This document shows, piece after piece, positions 23,143 through 29,728 of a stretch of DNA of 64,000 nucleotides. The translations under genes were made by a program, and so were the position numbers. The notes beneath the pieces were generated by a model that was given only the letters and a program-made list of their open reading frames with translations, had not been told where the DNA came from and made no database searches. How positions within the stretch are numbered: position 1 is the stretch's first letter; each line of letters opens with the position of its first letter. The stretch lies in the IMG/VR virus record IMGVR_UViG_3300049215_000529, positions 62,001 through 126,000 of that record. One strand, given 5' to 3'.

Positions 23143-23892
23143 TCACATCTGAGTGATTCCGTGTTCCTTTTGATAGAAAAAATGATTGACATAGCTTATA
23201 GATTCATGAGTTCCAGCATCGCTCCATAAACCATTAACCATACTGTAATGAAGATTATCAGCCTCTAGATATTTTCTAATAATATCTGTAATTTCATATT
23301 CACCACGTGCACTAGGCTTTAGTTCTTTGAAGTACTCAAAGAAAACTGGAGTAAACAAATAACATCCAGAGATTGCCATGTTAGTAAATTGCGGGTCTAA
23401 TGACTTAGGCTTTTCTTCAATTTTGACAATTTTATTATTATCATCTATGGAGGCAACACCAAAGCGCGTTAAAGAGGGATGATTTGCCAGCATAATTTGG
23501 GCACGCGGATGAGTTTTCCAGTTAGGATTATTCCAACGTGGAGCCTTCTCAAACACATTGTCTCCCAAGATGACGGAAAAATCAACATCATCTCTAACGA
23601 ATCTTTCGCACAAGCTGATTGCGTGAGCGATTCCCTTGGGCTCAGGCTGGTAAACGTAATTAAAATTCATTCCATAACGACTACCATCGCCAAGATAACC
23701 CACTACTTGGGAGAAGTGATTGCCACCCAAAATAACGGTAACGTCTTGACAACCCAATTGTTTCAGGGTATCAATAGGATAATCTATAATGAACTTTCCA
23801 TTAAGATCTAATAGATGTTTATTAACTACACTAGTGAGTGGGGCTAGACGAGAGCCAGTTCCGCCTGCGAGAATTATACCATTTTTTGCCAT
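23143..23892 (-). CDS. rmlA: glucose-1-phosphate thymidylyltransferase
   Basis: GIILAGGTGSRLAPLT, QPEPKGIAHA, ILGDN, SARGEYEITD, WSDAGT. Confidence 0.9.
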   Translation of the reverse strand: MAKNGIILAGGTGSRLAPLTSVVNKHLLDLNGKFIIDYPIDTLKQLGCQDVTVILGGNHFSQVVGYLGDGSRYGMNFNYVYQPEPKGIAHAISLCERFVRDDVDFSVILGDNVFEKAPRWNNPNWKTHPRAQIMLANHPSLTRFGVASIDDNNKIVKIEEKPKSLDPQFTNMAISGCYLFTPVFFEYFKELKPSARGEYEITDIIRKYLEADNLHYSMVNGLWSDAGTHESISYVNHFFYQKEHGITQM

Positions 23893-24598
23893 CCAACAAC
23901 CTTCCTATCTCCTTCTATAACATTGAGTTTTGCGGAGTAAGGTCGAAGGTTAGATAATTCCCAGCACTTCTTAATTTCTTCAGGTTTAGAAAAATCAAAA
24001 GAACTCTGTGGAATGATATGATCTAACTGCCAAGTCCAAGTAGAAATGTCATCATCTTTCCAAATTTCTACCTGATACTTTCCTTGGTTGTTCCAACTCA
24101 TCCAAGGTTCAAATTGTTTTTCAATATGAGTAATAAGCTCTTGAATAGAAAAAGAAATATAATCCATACAGCTATTCATTTTATTCAATCCGACTTTAGA
24201 TAGATAAAAATTGATTGATCTGGAGATATTCTTTCTCAATCTGTAAGATGGATCATTTTGCCTGCGGTCAGTTTCGTATTTACGATCTTTCTTTCTGATT
24301 TTCTCTTTATTGTTTGCCCTATAATTTTTACCATACTCTTGATTATAAAGTTTAACTTTTTCTGGGTTCTTTTCTCTATACTTTTTAGTATACTGGCGTT
24401 CAACAGAATTTTTCTTGATCTGCTCTTTATTTTCTTCGTAGTAACTGCGTCGATATTCTAATTTTTCTTCTTTATGAGAAGAATAAAATTGTTTATCTCT
24501 TTCTCTCAAGAGAGGTAGGTTATCCTGTCTATACTCTTTTTTCAAGCGTAAGATTGATGCTTTATTAGCTTGGTAATATTCTCTCTTACACTCTTTAC
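23874..24598 (-). pseudogene. HNH-type endonuclease, 3' part, disrupted by IS605
   Basis: WQLDHIIP...NLRPY; joins in frame to 26191..26273 once the IS is removed (SQFT-CKEC-KREYY). Confidence 0.85.
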
Positions 24599-24725
24599 GA
24601 TCTCCAAAGCAGAAAGCCAACCACTTCAGTGGTTGGATGAATGCGTTAGCAGTTATTTGTCAGATAGATATTATTTTTATTTGAATATATACAGCTTCTG
24701 ATATATACATGTCAGAAGGTAATGT

Positions 24726-25124
24726 ATGAGCGCACGATGGACACATAGCAATAAGGCAATCTATAACATTGGATACCATATTATTTGGTGTCCAAAGTAT
24801 CGTCGTAAAGTCTTAGTAGATCAGATTGAAGTTAGGCTAAAAGAACTTCTTATTGAGATTAGTTCTTCAATTGATTGTCAGATTGAAACTATGGAAATTA
24901 TGCCTGATCATGTTCATATCTTCATTAAATGCTCTCCAGTTCATTCTCCGCACTATGTAGTTCAGCAATTGAAAGGCAAATCATCTCATATATTGAGAGA
25001 AGAGTTTCCATTATTGAAAACTAGATTGCCAACTCTTTGGACAAGAAGTTATTATTGCGAAAGCGTGGGACATATCTCTGCTGCCACAGTTGAAAAATAT
25101 ATCTTGGAACAGAAGGCACGATGA
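24726..25124 (+). CDS. tnpA: Y1 HuH transposase
   Basis: YHIIWCPKYRR, MPDHVHIF, LKGKSS, WTRSYY, VEKYILEQ. Confidence 0.95.
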   Translation: MSARWTHSNKAIYNIGYHIIWCPKYRRKVLVDQIEVRLKELLIEISSSIDCQIETMEIMPDHVHIFIKCSPVHSPHYVVQQLKGKSSHILREEFPLLKTRLPTLWTRSYYCESVGHISAATVEKYILEQKAR

Positions 25125-26137
25125 GTATATTAGTTATCAAAATCAAACATAATGCCGATCTAACAGAACATTTGCGGAAGGCGGCGTTGGTAGCTAACTA
25201 TGCGATCAAAAATCGCATGAAATTATCATCAGTTAATGTCTCTAATATTGGTCTGCCTTCAGCAATTAGCAATCAAATTCTCCGCAAGTATGGCAAGAAC
25301 AAGAAGTGCAAGCGCATCAATCCAACGAAGATCAAGTTAGTAGCACCGGCACAGTCGATCAAGGTAGAAAGCTCTAAAATAAGAGTAGTACCTCTAAAAT
25401 TAACGCTAAACAATGAGAGTAAATATCAGATCGTAAAGGTCAAGCAGATTGAATTAGATGCTACTTATGCTTATGTTGCATTCGAGCAACAAGATCAGCC
25501 TATGCAACAATTGGAAAATTTTATTGGAGTTGATCTGAATGCAACATCTCATTGTGCGGTAGCTGCCGAACCTATTAGTGGTAAAGTTATTAAGCTTGGT
25601 AAGCAAGCACCTCATATACATAAGAAGTATAAGGCATTAAGAAGTAGTTTGCATAAGCAAAAATTATATAAGAAGTTGAAAGAAACAAAAGGTAAAGAAA
25701 CCAGAAAAGTAAAGTATCTTAATCATAAGATTAGCAAACAGATTGTTCAGTTTGCTAAAGACAACAATTGTGGTATCAAGTTAGAACAACTAACAGGTAT
25801 TCTCAATAGTAAAAAGAATAGTAAATCATTCCGTTATATTCTGAACTCTTGGAGCTACTATCAATTAGGCACAATGATCGCCTACAAAGCTCTACTTGCA
25901 GGTATTCCAGTATTGCATATTCGTCCAGCATACACCAGCCAAAACTGTAGTAAATGTGGCGAACTTGGAAAACGAAATGGTAAGAGGTTTAGCTGTTGTC
26001 ATTGCAAACACAGCGATCATGCGGATGTTAATGCGGCTTTCAATATCGCAAAGTCATCTGCCTTGATCACTTCCAAACAGACAGAGTTGTTTGGAAATGG
26101 TGCTACTGAAGCGCCTATGAGGCAATTCAATGTCTGA
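25121..26137 (+). CDS. tnpB: RNA-guided nuclease TnpB, compact (338 aa), RuvC D-E-D intact
   Basis: IGVDLN, IKLEQL, YTSQNCSKCG...CCHC, HADVNAAFNI. Confidence 0.93.
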   Translation: MSILVIKIKHNADLTEHLRKAALVANYAIKNRMKLSSVNVSNIGLPSAISNQILRKYGKNKKCKRINPTKIKLVAPAQSIKVESSKIRVVPLKLTLNNESKYQIVKVKQIELDATYAYVAFEQQDQPMQQLENFIGVDLNATSHCAVAAEPISGKVIKLGKQAPHIHKKYKALRSSLHKQKLYKKLKETKGKETRKVKYLNHKISKQIVQFAKDNNCGIKLEQLTGILNSKKNSKSFRYILNSWSYYQLGTMIAYKALLAGIPVLHIRPAYTSQNCSKCGELGKRNGKRFSCCHCKHSDHADVNAAFNIAKSSALITSKQTELFGNGATEAPMRQFNV

Positions 26138-26210
26138 AGCAAGACTTTTGAAACCTCAGAACCCAACGACTTTAGTCGTTGGTTATTCAGAAGTGAATTG
26201 AGAGGTGCCA
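26066..26210 (+). ncRNA. predicted omegaRNA of TnpB (scaffold to 26190, guide from 26191)
   Basis: overlaps tnpB 3' end and right end; stems 26071-26096 and 26163-26182; guide AAGTGAATTGAGAGGTGCCA; 5' end approximate. Confidence 0.7.
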
Positions 26211-26273
26211 TTGGCATTCTTGTATTCAGTTTTTTTCGCAACCATGTTTGGAGCAAATTGTTCCGTTCTTCAT
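26191..26273 (-). pseudogene. 5' fragment of the IS-disrupted HNH gene
   Basis: MKNGTICSKHGCEK/TEYKNANGTSQFT with a +1 frameshift in an A7 run (T7 at 26230-26236 on +). Confidence 0.7.
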
Positions 26274-26303: not shown

Positions 26304-26378
26304 TGGTCTCCCCGGCAGGATTCGAACCTGCGGCATTCAGTTTAGGAAACTGACGTTCTGTCCGCTGAACTACGGGGA
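26304..26378 (-). tRNA. tRNA-Arg(CCT)
   Basis: D arm GTTC/GAAC, anticodon arm TCAGT-TTCCTAA-ACTGA, T arm GCAGG-TTCGAAT-CCTGC, CCA; 3' acceptor strand 1 nt short. Confidence 0.85.
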
Positions 26379-26386
26379 GATACCAA

Positions 26387-26923
26387 TTATGCCTTTTGTT
26401 TAGTAGGCATAACTATCATACTCATAAATTTACCTTCCAAGGAAGTTGAGGGCGCAGGGGCAATCAAGCCAGCTAACTGCTGCAAAATCCAGTCCATCTT
26501 ATCCCTGCCTACTTGAGGATGGGTAATCTCACGACCACGGAAGCGAATAGTAAACTTAACTTTATGTCCCTCTGCCAAAAATTCTTTGGCTTGCTGAAGC
26601 TTGTGGTTCAAGTCATTCTCATCAGTATTGGGACGGAAAGTGAGTTCTTTCAATTCCTGAAGCCTTTGATTTTTCTTGGCTTCAGCCATTTTCTTTTTTT
26701 CTTCGTACTTATACTTACCGTAATCCATAATCTTACAGACAGGCGGAACAGCTCTTGGATTAATTTCTACCAAATCTAGGACTTGATCTTGAGCCATCTT
26801 AAGTGCATCACGTGTTGCCATGACGCCAGCATTGGTTCCATCGCTTAAAACCACACGAATTTGTGGGATGCGGATTTGATTGTTAATACGAATTCTTTGA
26901 TTAGTTGTTTGTGCGTTACTCAC
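26387..26923 (-). CDS. infC: translation initiation factor IF-3
   Basis: RINNQIR, DLVEINP..PPVCKIMDYGKYKYE, KELTFRPNTDENDL, GHKVKFTIRFRGRE. Confidence 0.95.
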   Translation of the reverse strand: MSNAQTTNQRIRINNQIRIPQIRVVLSDGTNAGVMATRDALKMAQDQVLDLVEINPRAVPPVCKIMDYGKYKYEEKKKMAEAKKNQRLQELKELTFRPNTDENDLNHKLQQAKEFLAEGHKVKFTIRFRGREITHPQVGRDKMDWILQQLAGLIAPAPSTSLEGKFMSMIVMPTKQKA

Positions 26924-27279
26924 TCAGTTTCCTCTTGTTTTTCTTTAAGAACTTCAATGGCAGCTTCTAGCAAATCTTCTTTACGATTTGTAGTATAGAA
27001 TTGTCCCTCTATACCTCGGGTATTGTAAACCTTGTAACCTTGTTTGGTTAGTTCGGTAAAAACTTTGTCATGAGAAGGGTCTACCATGGTTTTGTCCAGC
27101 TCTAAGGCTACTGCTAGGGGACAAAACTTCCCATCCTCATAATTATAGGTATCTAGTACCATCTCTTCTGGATAAGTAATCACTCTTTGCAATTGTGCAA
27201 TAGTCAATTGTCGTAATCCATTTTTTAATCCAGTTTTACGAGGATCTTCATTTTTTAATTTTATTGACGTCAATCCCAT
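26920..27279 (-). CDS. hypothetical protein
   Basis: track 26920..27363; start set at MGLTSIK. Confidence 0.6.
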   Translation of the reverse strand: MGLTSIKLKNEDPRKTGLKNGLRQLTIAQLQRVITYPEEMVLDTYNYEDGKFCPLAVALELDKTMVDPSHDKVFTELTKQGYKVYNTRGIEGQFYTTNRKEDLLEAAIEVLKEKQEETE

Positions 27280-27659
27280 ACTCTTCCAGGCAAGATATAT
27301 CCAAAGTCCATTGTTTACGGCTGCGCATAACCCAAGTCCAAAAAGAGCCTTTAACATAAACATCAGCTTCTGGGCGCTTCATTTTATTGACTTTCATCAA
27401 ATGCTGAAGAGCCGCTTCGCCTTTACCTCGGGTTTGGGCGAGACCTATATGTTTAACCATGTGACAGTCGGGACACAAGGCAATCATACCTTCCAATTTT
27501 TGAATTAAATTCTTGTCGTCATAATTCCAAATTTCATGACATTCTACCGGATGCTTTGGACCGACTTCACCACAAATTTCACAAGTATGCCACGCTTTGC
27601 CATATACTTGAGATTTTACTGCATCCCATTGTTTCTGCGTTAATACAGAGCGAACATTG
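27248..27659 (-). pseudogene. 5'-truncated HNH-like protein abutting the orphan IS right end
   Basis: open frame NVRSVLTQKQWDAVK...CEICG...HPVECHEIW...LCPDCHMVKH begins at the right-end junction with no start codon. Confidence 0.75.
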
Positions 27660-27784
27660 CTGAATAACCAACGACTAAAGTCGTTGGGTTCCGAGGTTCA
27701 AAAAGCTTTTCTTCAAGCATTTGATTGCCTCATAAGCGTTTCAGTACCACTATTCCATATAGGCTTTTGCTATATGGAGTGAAT
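27660..27784 (-). mobile_element. orphan IS605 right end / omegaRNA scaffold, no tnpB or left end
   Basis: last 32 nt identical to 26159-26190; similarity extends about 120 nt; upstream stem has different but paired sequence. Confidence 0.85.
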
Positions 27785-27879
27785 AATTTTCTCAAATTAT
27801 TCAATGTCGAAAACCTGCTTTTATGAGCAGTTGTAAAAATATTACCACAGCTCCCACATTTTAGTTCAATTATTTTCAT
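27730..27879 (-). CDS. 49-aa CxxC ORF running into the orphan scaffold (not in track)
   Basis: MKIIELKCGSCGNIFTTAHKSR...KRL. Confidence 0.35.
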   Translation of the reverse strand: MKIIELKCGSCGNIFTTAHKSRFSTLNNLRKLFTPYSKSLYGIVVLKRL

Positions 27880-27920: not shown

Positions 27921-28277
27921 TGGTGGAGATGTAGGGTACTGCCCCCTAGTCCGCGATATGCCCTTATCAAAACTCGTTCACAAACTTAGTCAATATCAAC
28001 GTCATTGACAACGTTGCTAGATTGTCGCTCTAGCGGGTTATTTACTGTTTATTTCAAATCCACAATCCGTAGCCGAATGTGGACTCTATCTTTAGTGGGT
28101 TGAATGTCCTTTGATTACCAAAGCTATCTCATCTGGGACATATCATCATGCGGCTAGCGCAAATGATTCAAATGCATTATCGTTTGCATTTATACGTCGA
28201 TTACTTTTGGAGGGGCAATCATCCTCTGTTTGCGTCATTCTGATAATTCGTTATCCCGTCGAATCTATGTCATCCCC
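27921..28277 (-). ncRNA. ssrA: tmRNA, complete; tag ANDNAFESFALAA
   Basis: GGGGATG/CATCTCC-A-CCA with G3:U70, TTCGAC, pk1, tag 28187-28149 then TGATGA, T arm TAGGG-GGCAGTA-CCCTA. Confidence 0.93.
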
Positions 28278-28451
28278 ATTTTTAGTTTTAAGCCATTCTA
28301 TTAAGTCAACAAAGAAATCAGAAACCTTCTGTGCAGCTTCTTTCTCTTCTAAGCCTAACCCATATTTTTTATCCTGCAACCAATAAGATAGTTGAGGCGA
28401 GCCAGGACATTTAGGAAATTTCTGTCTACGAAAACTCTGATACTCTTCCAT
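28251..28451 (-). CDS. hypothetical protein between the two tmRNAs
   Basis: 66-aa ORF; last 9 codons lie inside the tmRNA 5' end. Confidence 0.5.
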   Translation of the reverse strand: MEEYQSFRRQKFPKCPGSPQLSYWLQDKKYGLGLEEKEAAQKVSDFFVDLIEWLKTKNGDDIDSTG

Positions 28452-28466
28452 GAGATCAATCGAGAT

Positions 28467-28746
28467 ACTTAGTCATTGGCAACAAAGACAGATAATCGCT
28501 CCATCGAGCTATCTACTGTTAATCTTATTATCATACATCGTAGCCCTATATGATAACCAGCTTTGTGGGTTGACGTTCTTTTGATTACTCAAGCAGTCTT
28601 ATCTCAGAACGTATGGGCCTTACTCAGGCAGCCATAGCATATGCATTATCGTTTGCATTTATTACGTTGATTACTTTGGTAGGTGTAATCGCCTCTGTCT
28701 GAATCATTTTGTCAATTCTTTACCACGTCGAAACCCGTGCATGCCC
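28467..28746 (-). ncRNA. ssrA: second tmRNA, 3'-truncated; tag ANDNAYAMAA
   Basis: GGGCATG..TTTCGACG, intact pk1, tag 28656-28627; colinear with the complete copy up to GACTAAGT, then no T arm or acceptor end. Confidence 0.85.
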
Positions 28747-28773: not shown

Positions 28774-28847
28774 GGAGCTGATGATCGGTACTGCCCCGAT
28801 GCTATCTCGTTACGAGTGAGATGTTCTGCTATTTAAACTACATCAGC
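28773..28847 (-). tRNA. tRNA-Thr(CGT) with non-canonical GGCAGTA T-loop
   Basis: GCTGATG/CATCAGC-T-CCA, loop CT-CGT-AA, T arm ATCGG-GGCAGTA-CCGAT. Confidence 0.85.
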
Positions 28848-29518: not shown

Positions 29519-29593
29519 TGGAGCTGTAGGTGGGGATCGAACCCACGACCACTACTTTACCAAAGTAGTATTCTACCACTGAACTACTACAGC
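29519..29593 (-). tRNA. tRNA-Thr(GGT)
   Basis: GCTGTAG/CTACAGC-T-CCA, CTACT-TTGGTAA-AGTAG, GTGGG-TTCGATC-CCCAC. Confidence 0.93.
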
Positions 29594-29653: not shown

Positions 29654-29728
29654 TGGAGCTGGTGCCGAGAATCGAACTCGGGTCTCTGCGTTACAAGGGC
29701 AGGGTCTTACCATTAGGACGAAACCAGC
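29654..29728 (-). tRNA. tRNA-Thr(TGT)
   Basis: GCTGGTT/CACCAGC-T-CCA (one mismatch), loop CT-TGT-AA, CCGAG-TTCGATT-CTCGG. Confidence 0.88.

What the first reader, a model, noticed from the sequence alone, without database searches (positions are those of the whole stretch)
27640..27802. Orphan second omegaRNA with a different guide 1.5 kb from an intact TnpB
Seen: inverted right-end copy with the last 32 nt identical and no tnpA, tnpB or left end. Its upstream stem differs in sequence but stays paired (TCCATATAG/CTATATGGA versus TTCCAAACA/TGTTTGGAA), with an extra hairpin at 27781-27802. Its flank CAATGTTCGCTCTGTATTAA is the broken 5' end of an HNH-like gene; placing TTAC before it gives F-T-N-V-R-S, fitting the same target rule. 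Inference: one TnpB with two guides, the second acting in trans against intact alleles in related phages; a minimal multi-guide state. The paired stem may instead just reflect a diverged sister element that later lost its body.
Basis: partly seen in the sequence, partly recalled or inferred. Interest (0 to 1): 0.7.

Follow-up and report, generated by a model that had tools for sequence, protein, structure and literature searches.

The report
Guide-RNA-only mini-transposon in a phage
The supposed broken-off transposon end is a complete 173-base insertion carrying only a TnpB guide RNA; it sits right after the TTAC target motif inside a phage nuclease gene, appears in environmental RNA data, and probably borrows the TnpB enzyme of the full transposon 1.5 kb away, which is a known arrangement in an unusual form lacking the left-end hairpin.

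Summary
The repeat is real. The last 32 nt of the right end (RE) of the intact IS200/IS605 element (24599-26190) recur, inverted, at 27691-27660, and about 120 nt are homologous. A covariance model built without this copy recovers it full length (111 bits), with every modelled pair standard. It is not a torn-off remnant. It is a discrete 173-nt insertion (27660-27832, minus strand) lying directly 3' of TTAC (27836-27833). Deleting it fuses 27879-27833 to 27659-27248 into a 152-aa ORF reading ...I-F-T|N-V-R-S..., the normal length for this HNH-endonuclease family. So the gene's 5' end and the predicted TTAC are both present. The unit has no tnpA, no tnpB and no left-end (LE) hairpin; its 5' 53 nt are unrelated to the IS. 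Two metatranscriptomes give contigs across it, while neighbouring protein genes give none. DNA k-mer depth is about 3x that of the flanks, and two assemblies branch at its edges, so further copies probably exist, though none was seen. The best reading is a PATE-like, guide-RNA (omegaRNA)-only element using the neighbour's TnpB in trans to defend its own insertion site, a concept already published. I found no targetable intact allele in related phages, so the 'weapon' reading is unsupported.

The parts
27660..27832 (-). 173-nt protein-less mini-insertion (the 'orphan'): a 5' module plus an omegaRNA/right-end module
   Evidence: Removing it restores a 152-aa ORF. The DNA unitig 27662-27832 is bounded by graph branches and has about 3x the flank depth. 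IMG/VR contigs of the same phage overlap exactly at 27660-27786.
27660..27783 (-). omegaRNA scaffold / transposon right end: stem 1 27778-27754, hairpin 2, composite stem 3, RE hairpin 27687-27668, terminal TTATTCAG 27667-27660
   Evidence: The covariance model R1, built without this copy, matches it over positions 1-125 at 111.5 bits, E 4e-27, with no non-standard pair. nhmmer covers 27661-27779. The folds agree.
27780..27832 (-). 5' module of 53 nt with two hairpins (27830-27815 and about 27803-27780) and no detectable relation to the IS
   Evidence: Fold. No significant local alignment to the IS, its LE or relatives. One weak promoter-like site, TCGACA-16-AATTAT at 27810-27783, is no more than chance would give.
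27640..27659 (-). Guide-encoding flank (CAATGTTCGCTCTGTATTAA), which is codons 17 onward of the interrupted gene
   Evidence: The RNA contig runs 30 nt into it.
27833..27836 (-). TTAC target-adjacent motif directly 5' of the insertion
27833..27879 (-). 5' fragment of the HNH-endonuclease-family gene (MKIIELKCGSCGNIF + T codon split by the insertion)
   Evidence: It fuses in frame to the 3' part and gives the family's length. Its sequence is only weakly family-like.
27248..27659 (-). 3' fragment (136 codons plus stop) of the same gene, with no in-frame start before 27496
24599..26190 (+). Intact 1592-bp IS200/IS605 element: LE hairpin 24617-24636, tnpA 24726-25124, tnpB 25121-26137, omegaRNA scaffold 26066-26190. 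TTAC lies at 24595-24598 and the guide flank starts at 26191.
   Evidence: Pfam Y1_Tnp E 3e-39 and Cas12f1-like_TNB E 6e-22. The RuvC D/E/D residues and zinc-finger motifs are present. Removing the element restores a 256-aa ORF. R1 scores it at 144.8 bits.
27921..28277 (-). tmRNA gene immediately upstream; a possible source of read-through transcription into the mini-element
   Evidence: Rfam RF00023, 96 bits. RNA contigs cover it.

Best explanation
The feature is a 173-nt non-autonomous derivative of an IS200/IS605 element. It keeps only the right end, and therefore a complete omegaRNA gene. It is inserted 3' of TTAC in a phage HNH-endonuclease-family gene, which it disrupts. Shown: its anatomy and boundaries, its descent from a sister lineage of the neighbouring IS, preservation of every omegaRNA helix, and its presence in RNA libraries. 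Inferred: a transcript reading through the unit and about 16-20 nt of flank forms an omegaRNA that the TnpB of the intact IS 1.47 kb away can load in trans. The complex would cut only genomes carrying the uninterrupted site (TTAC + CAATGTTCGCTCTGTA). Those would be phage genomes of the same population that lack or have lost the insert, for example during co-infection or replication. Recombinational repair from an insert-bearing copy would then restore the element, which is restorative homing. Because it lacks an LE hairpin of the family type, TnpA should not be able to excise it. The element would then persist as a TnpB-dependent passenger rather than as a transposon. How it got its TTAC-abutting left edge, and how further copies arose, is unresolved.
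For: Boundaries: TTAC, frame restoration and family length; k-mer graph branches at both edges in two DNA runs; and a 127-nt contig overlap in a separate IMG/VR assembly, possibly of the same sample. Scaffold integrity: a model built without it scores it full length at 111.5 bits with all pairs standard. Six lineages fold into the same four-helix plan. Its private changes at otherwise invariant helix columns come as compensatory pairs, GC->AU at columns 41/57 and UA->CG at columns 75/86. Partner: one intact TnpB with RuvC D-E-D and zinc finger; the only other copy is 5'-truncated. Expression: RNA contigs at 27630-27851 (depth 7.6) and 27662-27812 (2.4) in two metatranscriptomes. In the same runs tmRNA has depth 16.9 and 12.7, and there is nothing over IF3, the rest of the HNH gene or tnpA. 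Self-protection: at the locus the protospacer is preceded by TCAG, not TTAC, and no other TTAC-plus-guide site with 4 or fewer mismatches exists in 204 kb. Precedent: PATEs that encode omegaRNAs needing TnpB in trans (PMC10055086).
Against: No loading or cleavage data exist. RNA evidence comes from unstranded assembled contigs, so neither strand nor ends are known, and the signal could be the structured 5' part of the disrupted mRNA or tmRNA read-through. The scaffold is 76-85% identical to the cognate one, and stem 1 differs at several pairs, so TnpB compatibility is assumed. No empty-site allele was found in any database. The interrupted gene's 3' part is still fully conserved, while its 16-aa 5' part is barely family-like, so the history of the site is not simple. 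Extra copies are inferred from depth and graph topology only.
Confidence: 0.55

Rival explanations
1. It is an inert fossil: a decayed insertion with no present function. The RNA signal would be only the structured, nuclease-resistant 5' portion of the dead HNH mRNA or tmRNA read-through. The helices would be intact only because the element is young or was shaped in a functional full-length ancestor.
For: There is no LE hairpin. The tnpB-derived reading frame in the unit is broken by a 1-nt indel, from my reading. The compensatory changes could predate miniaturisation. No significant promoter of its own was found. No target allele was found.
Against: All 26 modelled pairs are intact and the model scores it full length. 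RNA coverage stops about 30 nt past the RE, while the remaining 380 nt of the same gene have none. Depth and graph data suggest more than one copy.
Confidence: 0.28
2. It is a mobile PATE/MITE-type element in its own right, excised and inserted by a TnpA in trans through an unconventional left end such as the 27803-27780 hairpin. That would account for several copies with different flanks and guides.
For: The insertion lies precisely 3' of TTAC. Unitig depth is about 3x and the assembly graph branches at both edges. PATE-like LE-LE-RE elements with this hairpin family exist in metagenomes (L093).
Against: The 5' hairpins do not resemble the RE or LE hairpin that a Y1 TnpA dimer must bind at both ends. 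No AAAG-type LE guide tetranucleotide lies next to a hairpin. The multi-copy unitig stops at 27832 and does not include TTAC, whereas a multi-copy LE unitig in the same runs does begin with TTAC. So the other copies are probably not preceded by TTAC. No second copy was found in 324 kb of this phage, IMG/VR, JGI contigs or GTDB genomes.
Confidence: 0.12
3. One reading: the second guide is kept as a weapon that lets the phage's single TnpB cut intact alleles of the HNH gene in competing related phages.
For: Phage co-infection makes homing and marker exclusion plausible, and free-standing nucleases do this in T-even phages (review PMC13565253). The RNA is present.
Against: The nearest intact allele lacks TTAC and mismatches the guide heavily. 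119 of 120 homologues have a residue other than T at the junction, which excludes TTAC in that frame. No family allele with TTAC plus seed was found in the IMG/VR rows returned.
Confidence: 0.05

Closest known systems
PATEs (palindrome-associated transposable elements): protein-less IS200/IS605 derivatives, some encoding omegaRNAs used by TnpB in trans (Dyall-Smith 2011, PMC3119063; Meers 2023, PMC10055086)
   Same: It is short and non-coding, derives from an IS200/IS605 element, is inserted at the family's TAM, carries a complete omegaRNA with its own guide, and lies near an autonomous element that could supply TnpB.
   Different: PATEs keep both LE and RE palindromes and are TnpA-mobilisable. 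This unit has no LE-type hairpin, and its 5' 53 nt are unrelated to the IS. It sits in a large phage genome, and only one copy is visible in sequence.
Canonical IS605-group elements with TnpB/omegaRNA (IS608, ISDra2, ISGst)
   Same: It follows the TTAC-type TAM rule. The subterminal RE hairpin has a GAAC guide tetranucleotide and a TCAG terminus, parallel to IS608's GAAT/TCAA (my knowledge of IS608). The omegaRNA overlaps the tnpB 3' end and the RE, and the guide is the 3' flank.
   Different: The nuclease and the transposase are absent from the unit, and the tnpB-derived coding remnant is frameshifted.
IStrons (group I intron fused to an IS200/IS605 element)
   Same: Both are IS200/IS605 derivatives inserted in a coding gene, where the RNA-level behaviour of the insert matters.
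   Different: No group I intron was detected by Rfam, and there is no evidence of splicing. The 173 nt contain stops and break the frame.
CRISPR arrays / Cas12 with trans-supplied guides
   Same: Conceptually, one RuvC nuclease has more than one guide, and one guide is encoded away from the nuclease gene.
   Different: There is no repeat-spacer array and no acquisition machinery. Each guide is fixed by an insertion site.

Membership tests
IS200/IS605 right end carrying a TnpB omegaRNA | Subterminal RE hairpin and terminal cleavage motif of the family | tested here: met
   The last 32 nt are identical to the intact IS, including the CCAACGAC-TTTA-GTCGTTGG hairpin and TTATTCAG.
IS200/IS605 right end carrying a TnpB omegaRNA | Conserved omegaRNA secondary structure supported by covariation | tested here: met
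   Model R1, built without this copy, gives 111.5 bits, E 4e-27, full length, all pairs standard. In the six-sequence alignment, 12 of 22 pairs show double compensatory changes.
IS200/IS605 right end carrying a TnpB omegaRNA | The guide is the 3' flank, and the matching empty site is preceded by the TAM | tested here: met
   Deleting the unit creates TTAC+CAATGTTCGC... in frame.
IS200/IS605 right end carrying a TnpB omegaRNA | tnpB encoded in cis, overlapping the scaffold | tested here: not met
   There is no TnpB similarity upstream of 27779. The nearest tnpB is 1.47 kb away.
IS200/IS605 right end carrying a TnpB omegaRNA | The RNA is made | tested here: inconclusive
   Contigs from two metatranscriptomes cover 27630-27851 and 27662-27812, but strand, ends and processing are unknown.
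IS200/IS605 right end carrying a TnpB omegaRNA | The RNA is bound by TnpB and directs TAM-dependent DNA cleavage | not testable with these tools
   This needs RIP-seq and cleavage or interference assays.
PATE / MITE-like non-autonomous IS200/IS605 element | Short, with no protein-coding capacity | tested here: met
   It is 173 nt, and no ORF lies wholly inside it except a 41-aa TTG frame.
PATE / MITE-like non-autonomous IS200/IS605 element | Inserted 3' of the TAM without target duplication | tested here: met
   TTAC|unit|CAATG, with a scarless in-frame fusion on removal.
PATE / MITE-like non-autonomous IS200/IS605 element | Both LE and RE palindromes recognisable by the family TnpA | tested here: not met
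   The RE is present. No LE-type hairpin or LE tip is present, and the 5' 53 nt have no significant similarity to the LE or IS.
PATE / MITE-like non-autonomous IS200/IS605 element | Several copies at different sites | tested here: inconclusive
   Unitig depth is 32-40 against 10-12 in the flanks, with graph branches at both edges. No second copy was found in any sequence searched.
IStron | Group I intron at the 5' side of the element | tested here: not met
   No intron family was found in Rfam at gathering or at E<=1.
CRISPR-like multi-guide array | Tandem repeat-spacer organisation | tested here: not met
   There are only two scaffolds, convergent and 1.47 kb apart, each at an insertion site.

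The most novel reading that the evidence does not exclude
The 173-nt unit is a self-propagating 'guide-only' selfish element of phage populations. It would have shed both transposon genes and the TnpA-dependent left end, acquired a new 5' module (promoter or stabiliser), and spread and persisted purely by programming another element's TnpB to cut insert-free genomes. That would be a natural stage in which an omegaRNA has become a free-standing, trans-acting guide gene, possibly present in several copies with different guides.
Probability: 0.15. Interest if true: 0.75.

Novelty: new variant of a known kind. Interest (0 to 1): 0.45.

Why it matters
Protein-less IS200/IS605 derivatives that keep an omegaRNA are the natural setting in which a TnpB nuclease serves guides encoded elsewhere. 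That uncoupling is often invoked on the path from transposon nucleases to CRISPR-Cas12. This case lies in a large environmental phage, next to its probable TnpB donor, and it lacks the left-end hairpin it would need to be moved by TnpA. Environmental RNA data show it more clearly than they show the cognate omegaRNA. If the RNA is loaded, the locus would be a compact natural test of trans-guide use and of TnpB-driven homing between co-infecting phage genomes. If it is not loaded, it is an ordinary decaying insertion.

Tried and rejected
1. I looked for the 'missing' 5' end of the gene as an IELVP..W[FL] peptide anywhere in the 204 kb and found none. The 5' end turned out to be present but diverged.
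2. I tested whether the 49-aa ORF upstream (27879-27730) is a degenerate TnpB C-terminus. BLASTP, Pfam and nhmmer gave no signal beyond 27779, although MAFFT gives a suggestive but insignificant alignment.
3. I tested whether the 5' 53 nt are an LE tip or internal IS sequence. Local alignments scored no better than shuffles.
4. I searched for further copies or a full-length sister element by exact patterns. Scans covered IMG/VR, JGI metagenome contigs, GTDB genomes and the two other contigs of this phage. Nothing appeared beyond this phage and known relatives.
5. I searched for intact target alleles. None was usable, and P0042 (F-T-N-V-R) has no retrievable DNA.
6. Rfam has no family for this RNA.
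7. The promoter scan gave one site, below chance expectation.
8. I did not run complex prediction, because shuffled-RNA controls would not separate cognate from sister scaffolds.
9. An early reading placed the LE junction at 24590. The correct TTAC is at 24595-24598.

Full report
Setting. The window is bases 62001-126000 of a 204-kb IMG/VR phage record, which CheckV estimates as 47% complete. The sequence is found in moss metagenomes. The neighbourhood on the minus strand carries tRNA-Arg, an IF3 homologue, a 147-aa ORF, the gene in question, a tmRNA gene and more tRNAs.

The intact element. TTAC lies at 24595-24598 and is followed by a 1592-bp IS200/IS605 element at 24599-26190. The LE tip ends in AAAG and is followed by the hairpin at 24617-24636. 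tnpA spans 24726-25124 (Pfam Y1_Tnp, E 3e-39). tnpB spans 25121-26137 (338 aa; Cas12f1-like TNB domain, E 6e-22). The TnpB keeps the RuvC Asp (GVDLN), Glu (IKLEQL) and Asp (HADVNAA) and both CxxC motifs. Its nearest solved relatives are TnpB and Cas12f. The RE ends ...GAAC-[CCAACGAC TTTA GTCGTTGG]-TTATTCAG at 26190. Removing 24599-26190 joins two minus-strand fragments into a 256-aa ORF, which confirms the ends and the TTAC rule. That host gene has no Pfam or PHROG hit. Its C-terminal LDHIIP...N motif only looks HNH-like to me.

Checking the observation. The 32-nt RE terminus occurs exactly twice in the window, with 0 expected by chance, and twice in the whole record. A profile of five family members aligns to 27661-27779 (E 7e-24) and no further. 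Both copies fold into the same plan (z about -4.8 each). The plan is a 9-bp stem 1 with different sequence, a short hairpin 2, a composite stem 3 and the RE hairpin. The sequence-level observation therefore holds.

The minus strand upstream of the homology reads ...ATG AAA ATA ATT GAA CTA ... AAT ATT TTT AC|A ACT GCT.... TTAC occupies 27836-27833. Deleting exactly 27660-27832 (173 nt) fuses 27879-27833 to 27659-27248. The result is a 152-aa ORF, MKIIELKCGSCGNIFT|NVRSVLTQKQWD.... Full-length homologues are 151-160 aa and begin MKLxIELVPSxSWFxNVR. PHROG 5200 ('HNH endonuclease') matches the 3' fragment from profile position 18 of 154.

Three lines of evidence place the left edge at 27832/27833.
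- The TTAC motif sits there.
- The reading frame and the protein length are restored by the deletion.
- In Logan k=31 contigs of two DNA runs, a 171-nt unitig spans 27662-27832 and overlaps its neighbours by k-1. In a separate IMG/VR assembly (possibly of the same sample), two contigs 100% identical to the window end at 27660 and start at 27786, a 127-nt overlap typical of a branching k-mer node.

One caveat applies. The 16 N-terminal residues add only about 4 bits against a family HMM, and 15 of 200 shuffles do as well. Only the MK.IEL start and the F-x-NVR junction look family-like. By contrast, the 136-aa 3' part keeps all invariant residues and is 81% identical to its best homologue.

Anatomy of the unit. 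The 3' 120-124 nt are the omegaRNA/RE module. A covariance model built from six other family sequences, without this copy, finds it over model positions 1-125 at 111.5 bits (E 4e-27) with no non-standard pair. Only the two scaffolds score in the window and in the 204 kb. Relatives carry 93%, 79%, 76%, 51% and about 42% identical TnpBs (L008, L009/L010, L011, L012-15, L019). All fold to the same four-helix plan, and stem 1 differs in every lineage. The mini-element keeps 31 of 37 columns that are invariant in the other five. Its private changes in helices are compensatory: GC->AU at alignment columns 41/57 and UA->CG at 75/86. Its central part matches the L009/L010 type better than the neighbouring IS. 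It therefore descends from a sister lineage and is not a copy of the neighbour. The tnpB-derived frame in it still ends at the homologous stop but carries a 1-nt indel, from my reading. The 5' 53 nt (27832-27780) form two hairpins and have no significant similarity to the IS, its LE or relatives. There is no CCAAC...GTTGG-type LE hairpin, and no AAAG guide tetranucleotide lies next to a hairpin. Among LEs of this hairpin family in metagenomes, TTAC pairs with ...AAAG and TTAT with ...AAAA. The unit has nothing comparable.

Expression. Two distinct metatranscriptome data sets yield contigs over 27630-27851 (depth 7.6, one mismatch) and 27662-27812 (depth 2.4). The same runs cover the adjacent tmRNA at depths 16.9 and 12.7. 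One run has a weak tnpB fragment at depth 2.2. Neither covers IF3, the remaining 380 nt of the HNH gene, tnpA or the cognate omegaRNA. The first contig spans both junctions, so it comes from this locus. Uniform DNA carry-over is therefore unlikely. However, contigs are unstranded, hide the ends of RNA molecules and show presence only. The one promoter-like site inside the unit (27810-27783) is within chance expectation. Read-through from the gene's own promoter or from tmRNA is equally possible.

Copy number. The 171-nt unitig has depth 32 and 40, against 10-12 for the long flanking unitigs. Together with the graph branches, this implies about two further copy-equivalents in other contexts. 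Yet no other copy exists in the 204-kb record or in the two other contigs of this phage, which total 324 kb. None was found in IMG/VR, JGI contigs or GTDB genomes by exact probes either. The unit is found only in runs that also hold the phage. The multi-copy unitig stops at 27832 and excludes TTAC. An LE-like 172-nt unitig of similar extra depth (22-26) in the same runs begins exactly with TTAC. This suggests, without proving it, that the other copies continue 5' into a longer LE-bearing parent (a true PATE), and that the window copy lost that part. PATE-like elements with this hairpin do exist (L093).

Targets. Within the 204 kb, neither guide has a TTAC-preceded match with 4 or fewer mismatches. 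At the loci themselves the protospacer follows TCAG. The nearest intact allele of the HNH gene (L003, 81% protein identity) reads TGG TTT GCT|AAT GTA CGT, with no TTAC and several seed mismatches. Only 1 of 120 homologues has F-T at the junction, and its DNA could not be fetched. The guide therefore matches only the element's own empty site, as for any IS200/IS605 right end.

Interpretation. The most economical reading is a PATE-like, omegaRNA-only derivative that relies on the neighbour's TnpB in trans for restorative homing at its own site. [quoted passage not shown] The unusual points are the absence of an LE hairpin despite a perfect TAM-abutting edge, the unrelated 5' module, the phage setting, and RNA abundance apparently above that of the cognate omegaRNA. 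They are weighed in their own sections. Loading and cleavage are untested, so the functional part stays an inference.

Noticed in passing
window 27921-28277 (-) and 28446-28738 (-): The phage encodes a tmRNA (Rfam 96 bits), and RNA contigs cover it. A second, diverged tmRNA-like copy lies just upstream (41 bits, below the 47-bit cut-off; about 69% identical over about 265 nt). A tRNA-like match lies at 28776-28847.
   Followed up: partly
window 26387-26923 (-), 26304-26379 (-), 29519-29593 (-), 29657-29728 (-): A phage-encoded translation initiation factor IF3 homologue (both Pfam domains) sits among tRNA genes (Arg-CCT, Thr-GGT and a weaker tRNA match). This is a translation-gene cluster typical of very large phages.
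   Followed up: no
G000:C1:179338-179880 (outside the window): A second, 5'-truncated TnpB remnant (181-aa frame, matching residues 203-310) belongs to a different subfamily. Its RE is ...CCACCAGCCTCGTGCTGGTGG-TAATTGAC. The related contig G003 carries an intact member of that TAATTGAC subfamily (L140 about 1150-1530).
   Followed up: partly
window 23874-24598 + 26191-26244 (-); L011: The intact IS also splits a gene, a 256-aa ORF with an LDHIIP...N motif and no profile hit. In relative L011 the IS lies between HNH-like coding fragments. Insertions of this IS family in phages seem to sit in dispensable nuclease-type genes.
   Followed up: partly
window 27660-27680 (-): Read in the frame of the interrupted gene, the RE terminus plus flank encodes ...S-R-W-L-F-S-N-V-R. 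This mimics the family's S-x-W-[FL]-[NS]-N-V-R N-terminal motif. No in-frame start codon precedes it (upstream stop TGA at about 27700), so it is probably coincidence.
   Followed up: partly
loci L016-L135 (JGI metagenome contigs): The 20-nt hairpin CCAACGACTTTAGTCGTTGG serves as both LE and RE hairpin in many diverged IS200/IS605 lineages from peat, sediment and lake metagenomes. In the LEs, the TAM covaries with the tetranucleotide 5' of the hairpin (TTAC with AAAG, TTAT with AAAA). L093 holds a 415-nt protein-less LE-LE-RE composite.
   Followed up: partly
window 27699: The RNA contig of run X5 reads A where all DNA contigs read C (plus strand), which is a G->U change in the 3' strand of stem 3 of the mini-element RNA. 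It is probably a strain difference between studies.
   Followed up: no
window 24604-24646: In both DNA runs a 172-nt unitig at about twice the phage's depth starts with TTACGATCTC and matches only the first about 50 nt of the LE, then diverges. This points to another multi-copy LE-bearing element in the community, possibly the parent of the mini-element.
   Followed up: no
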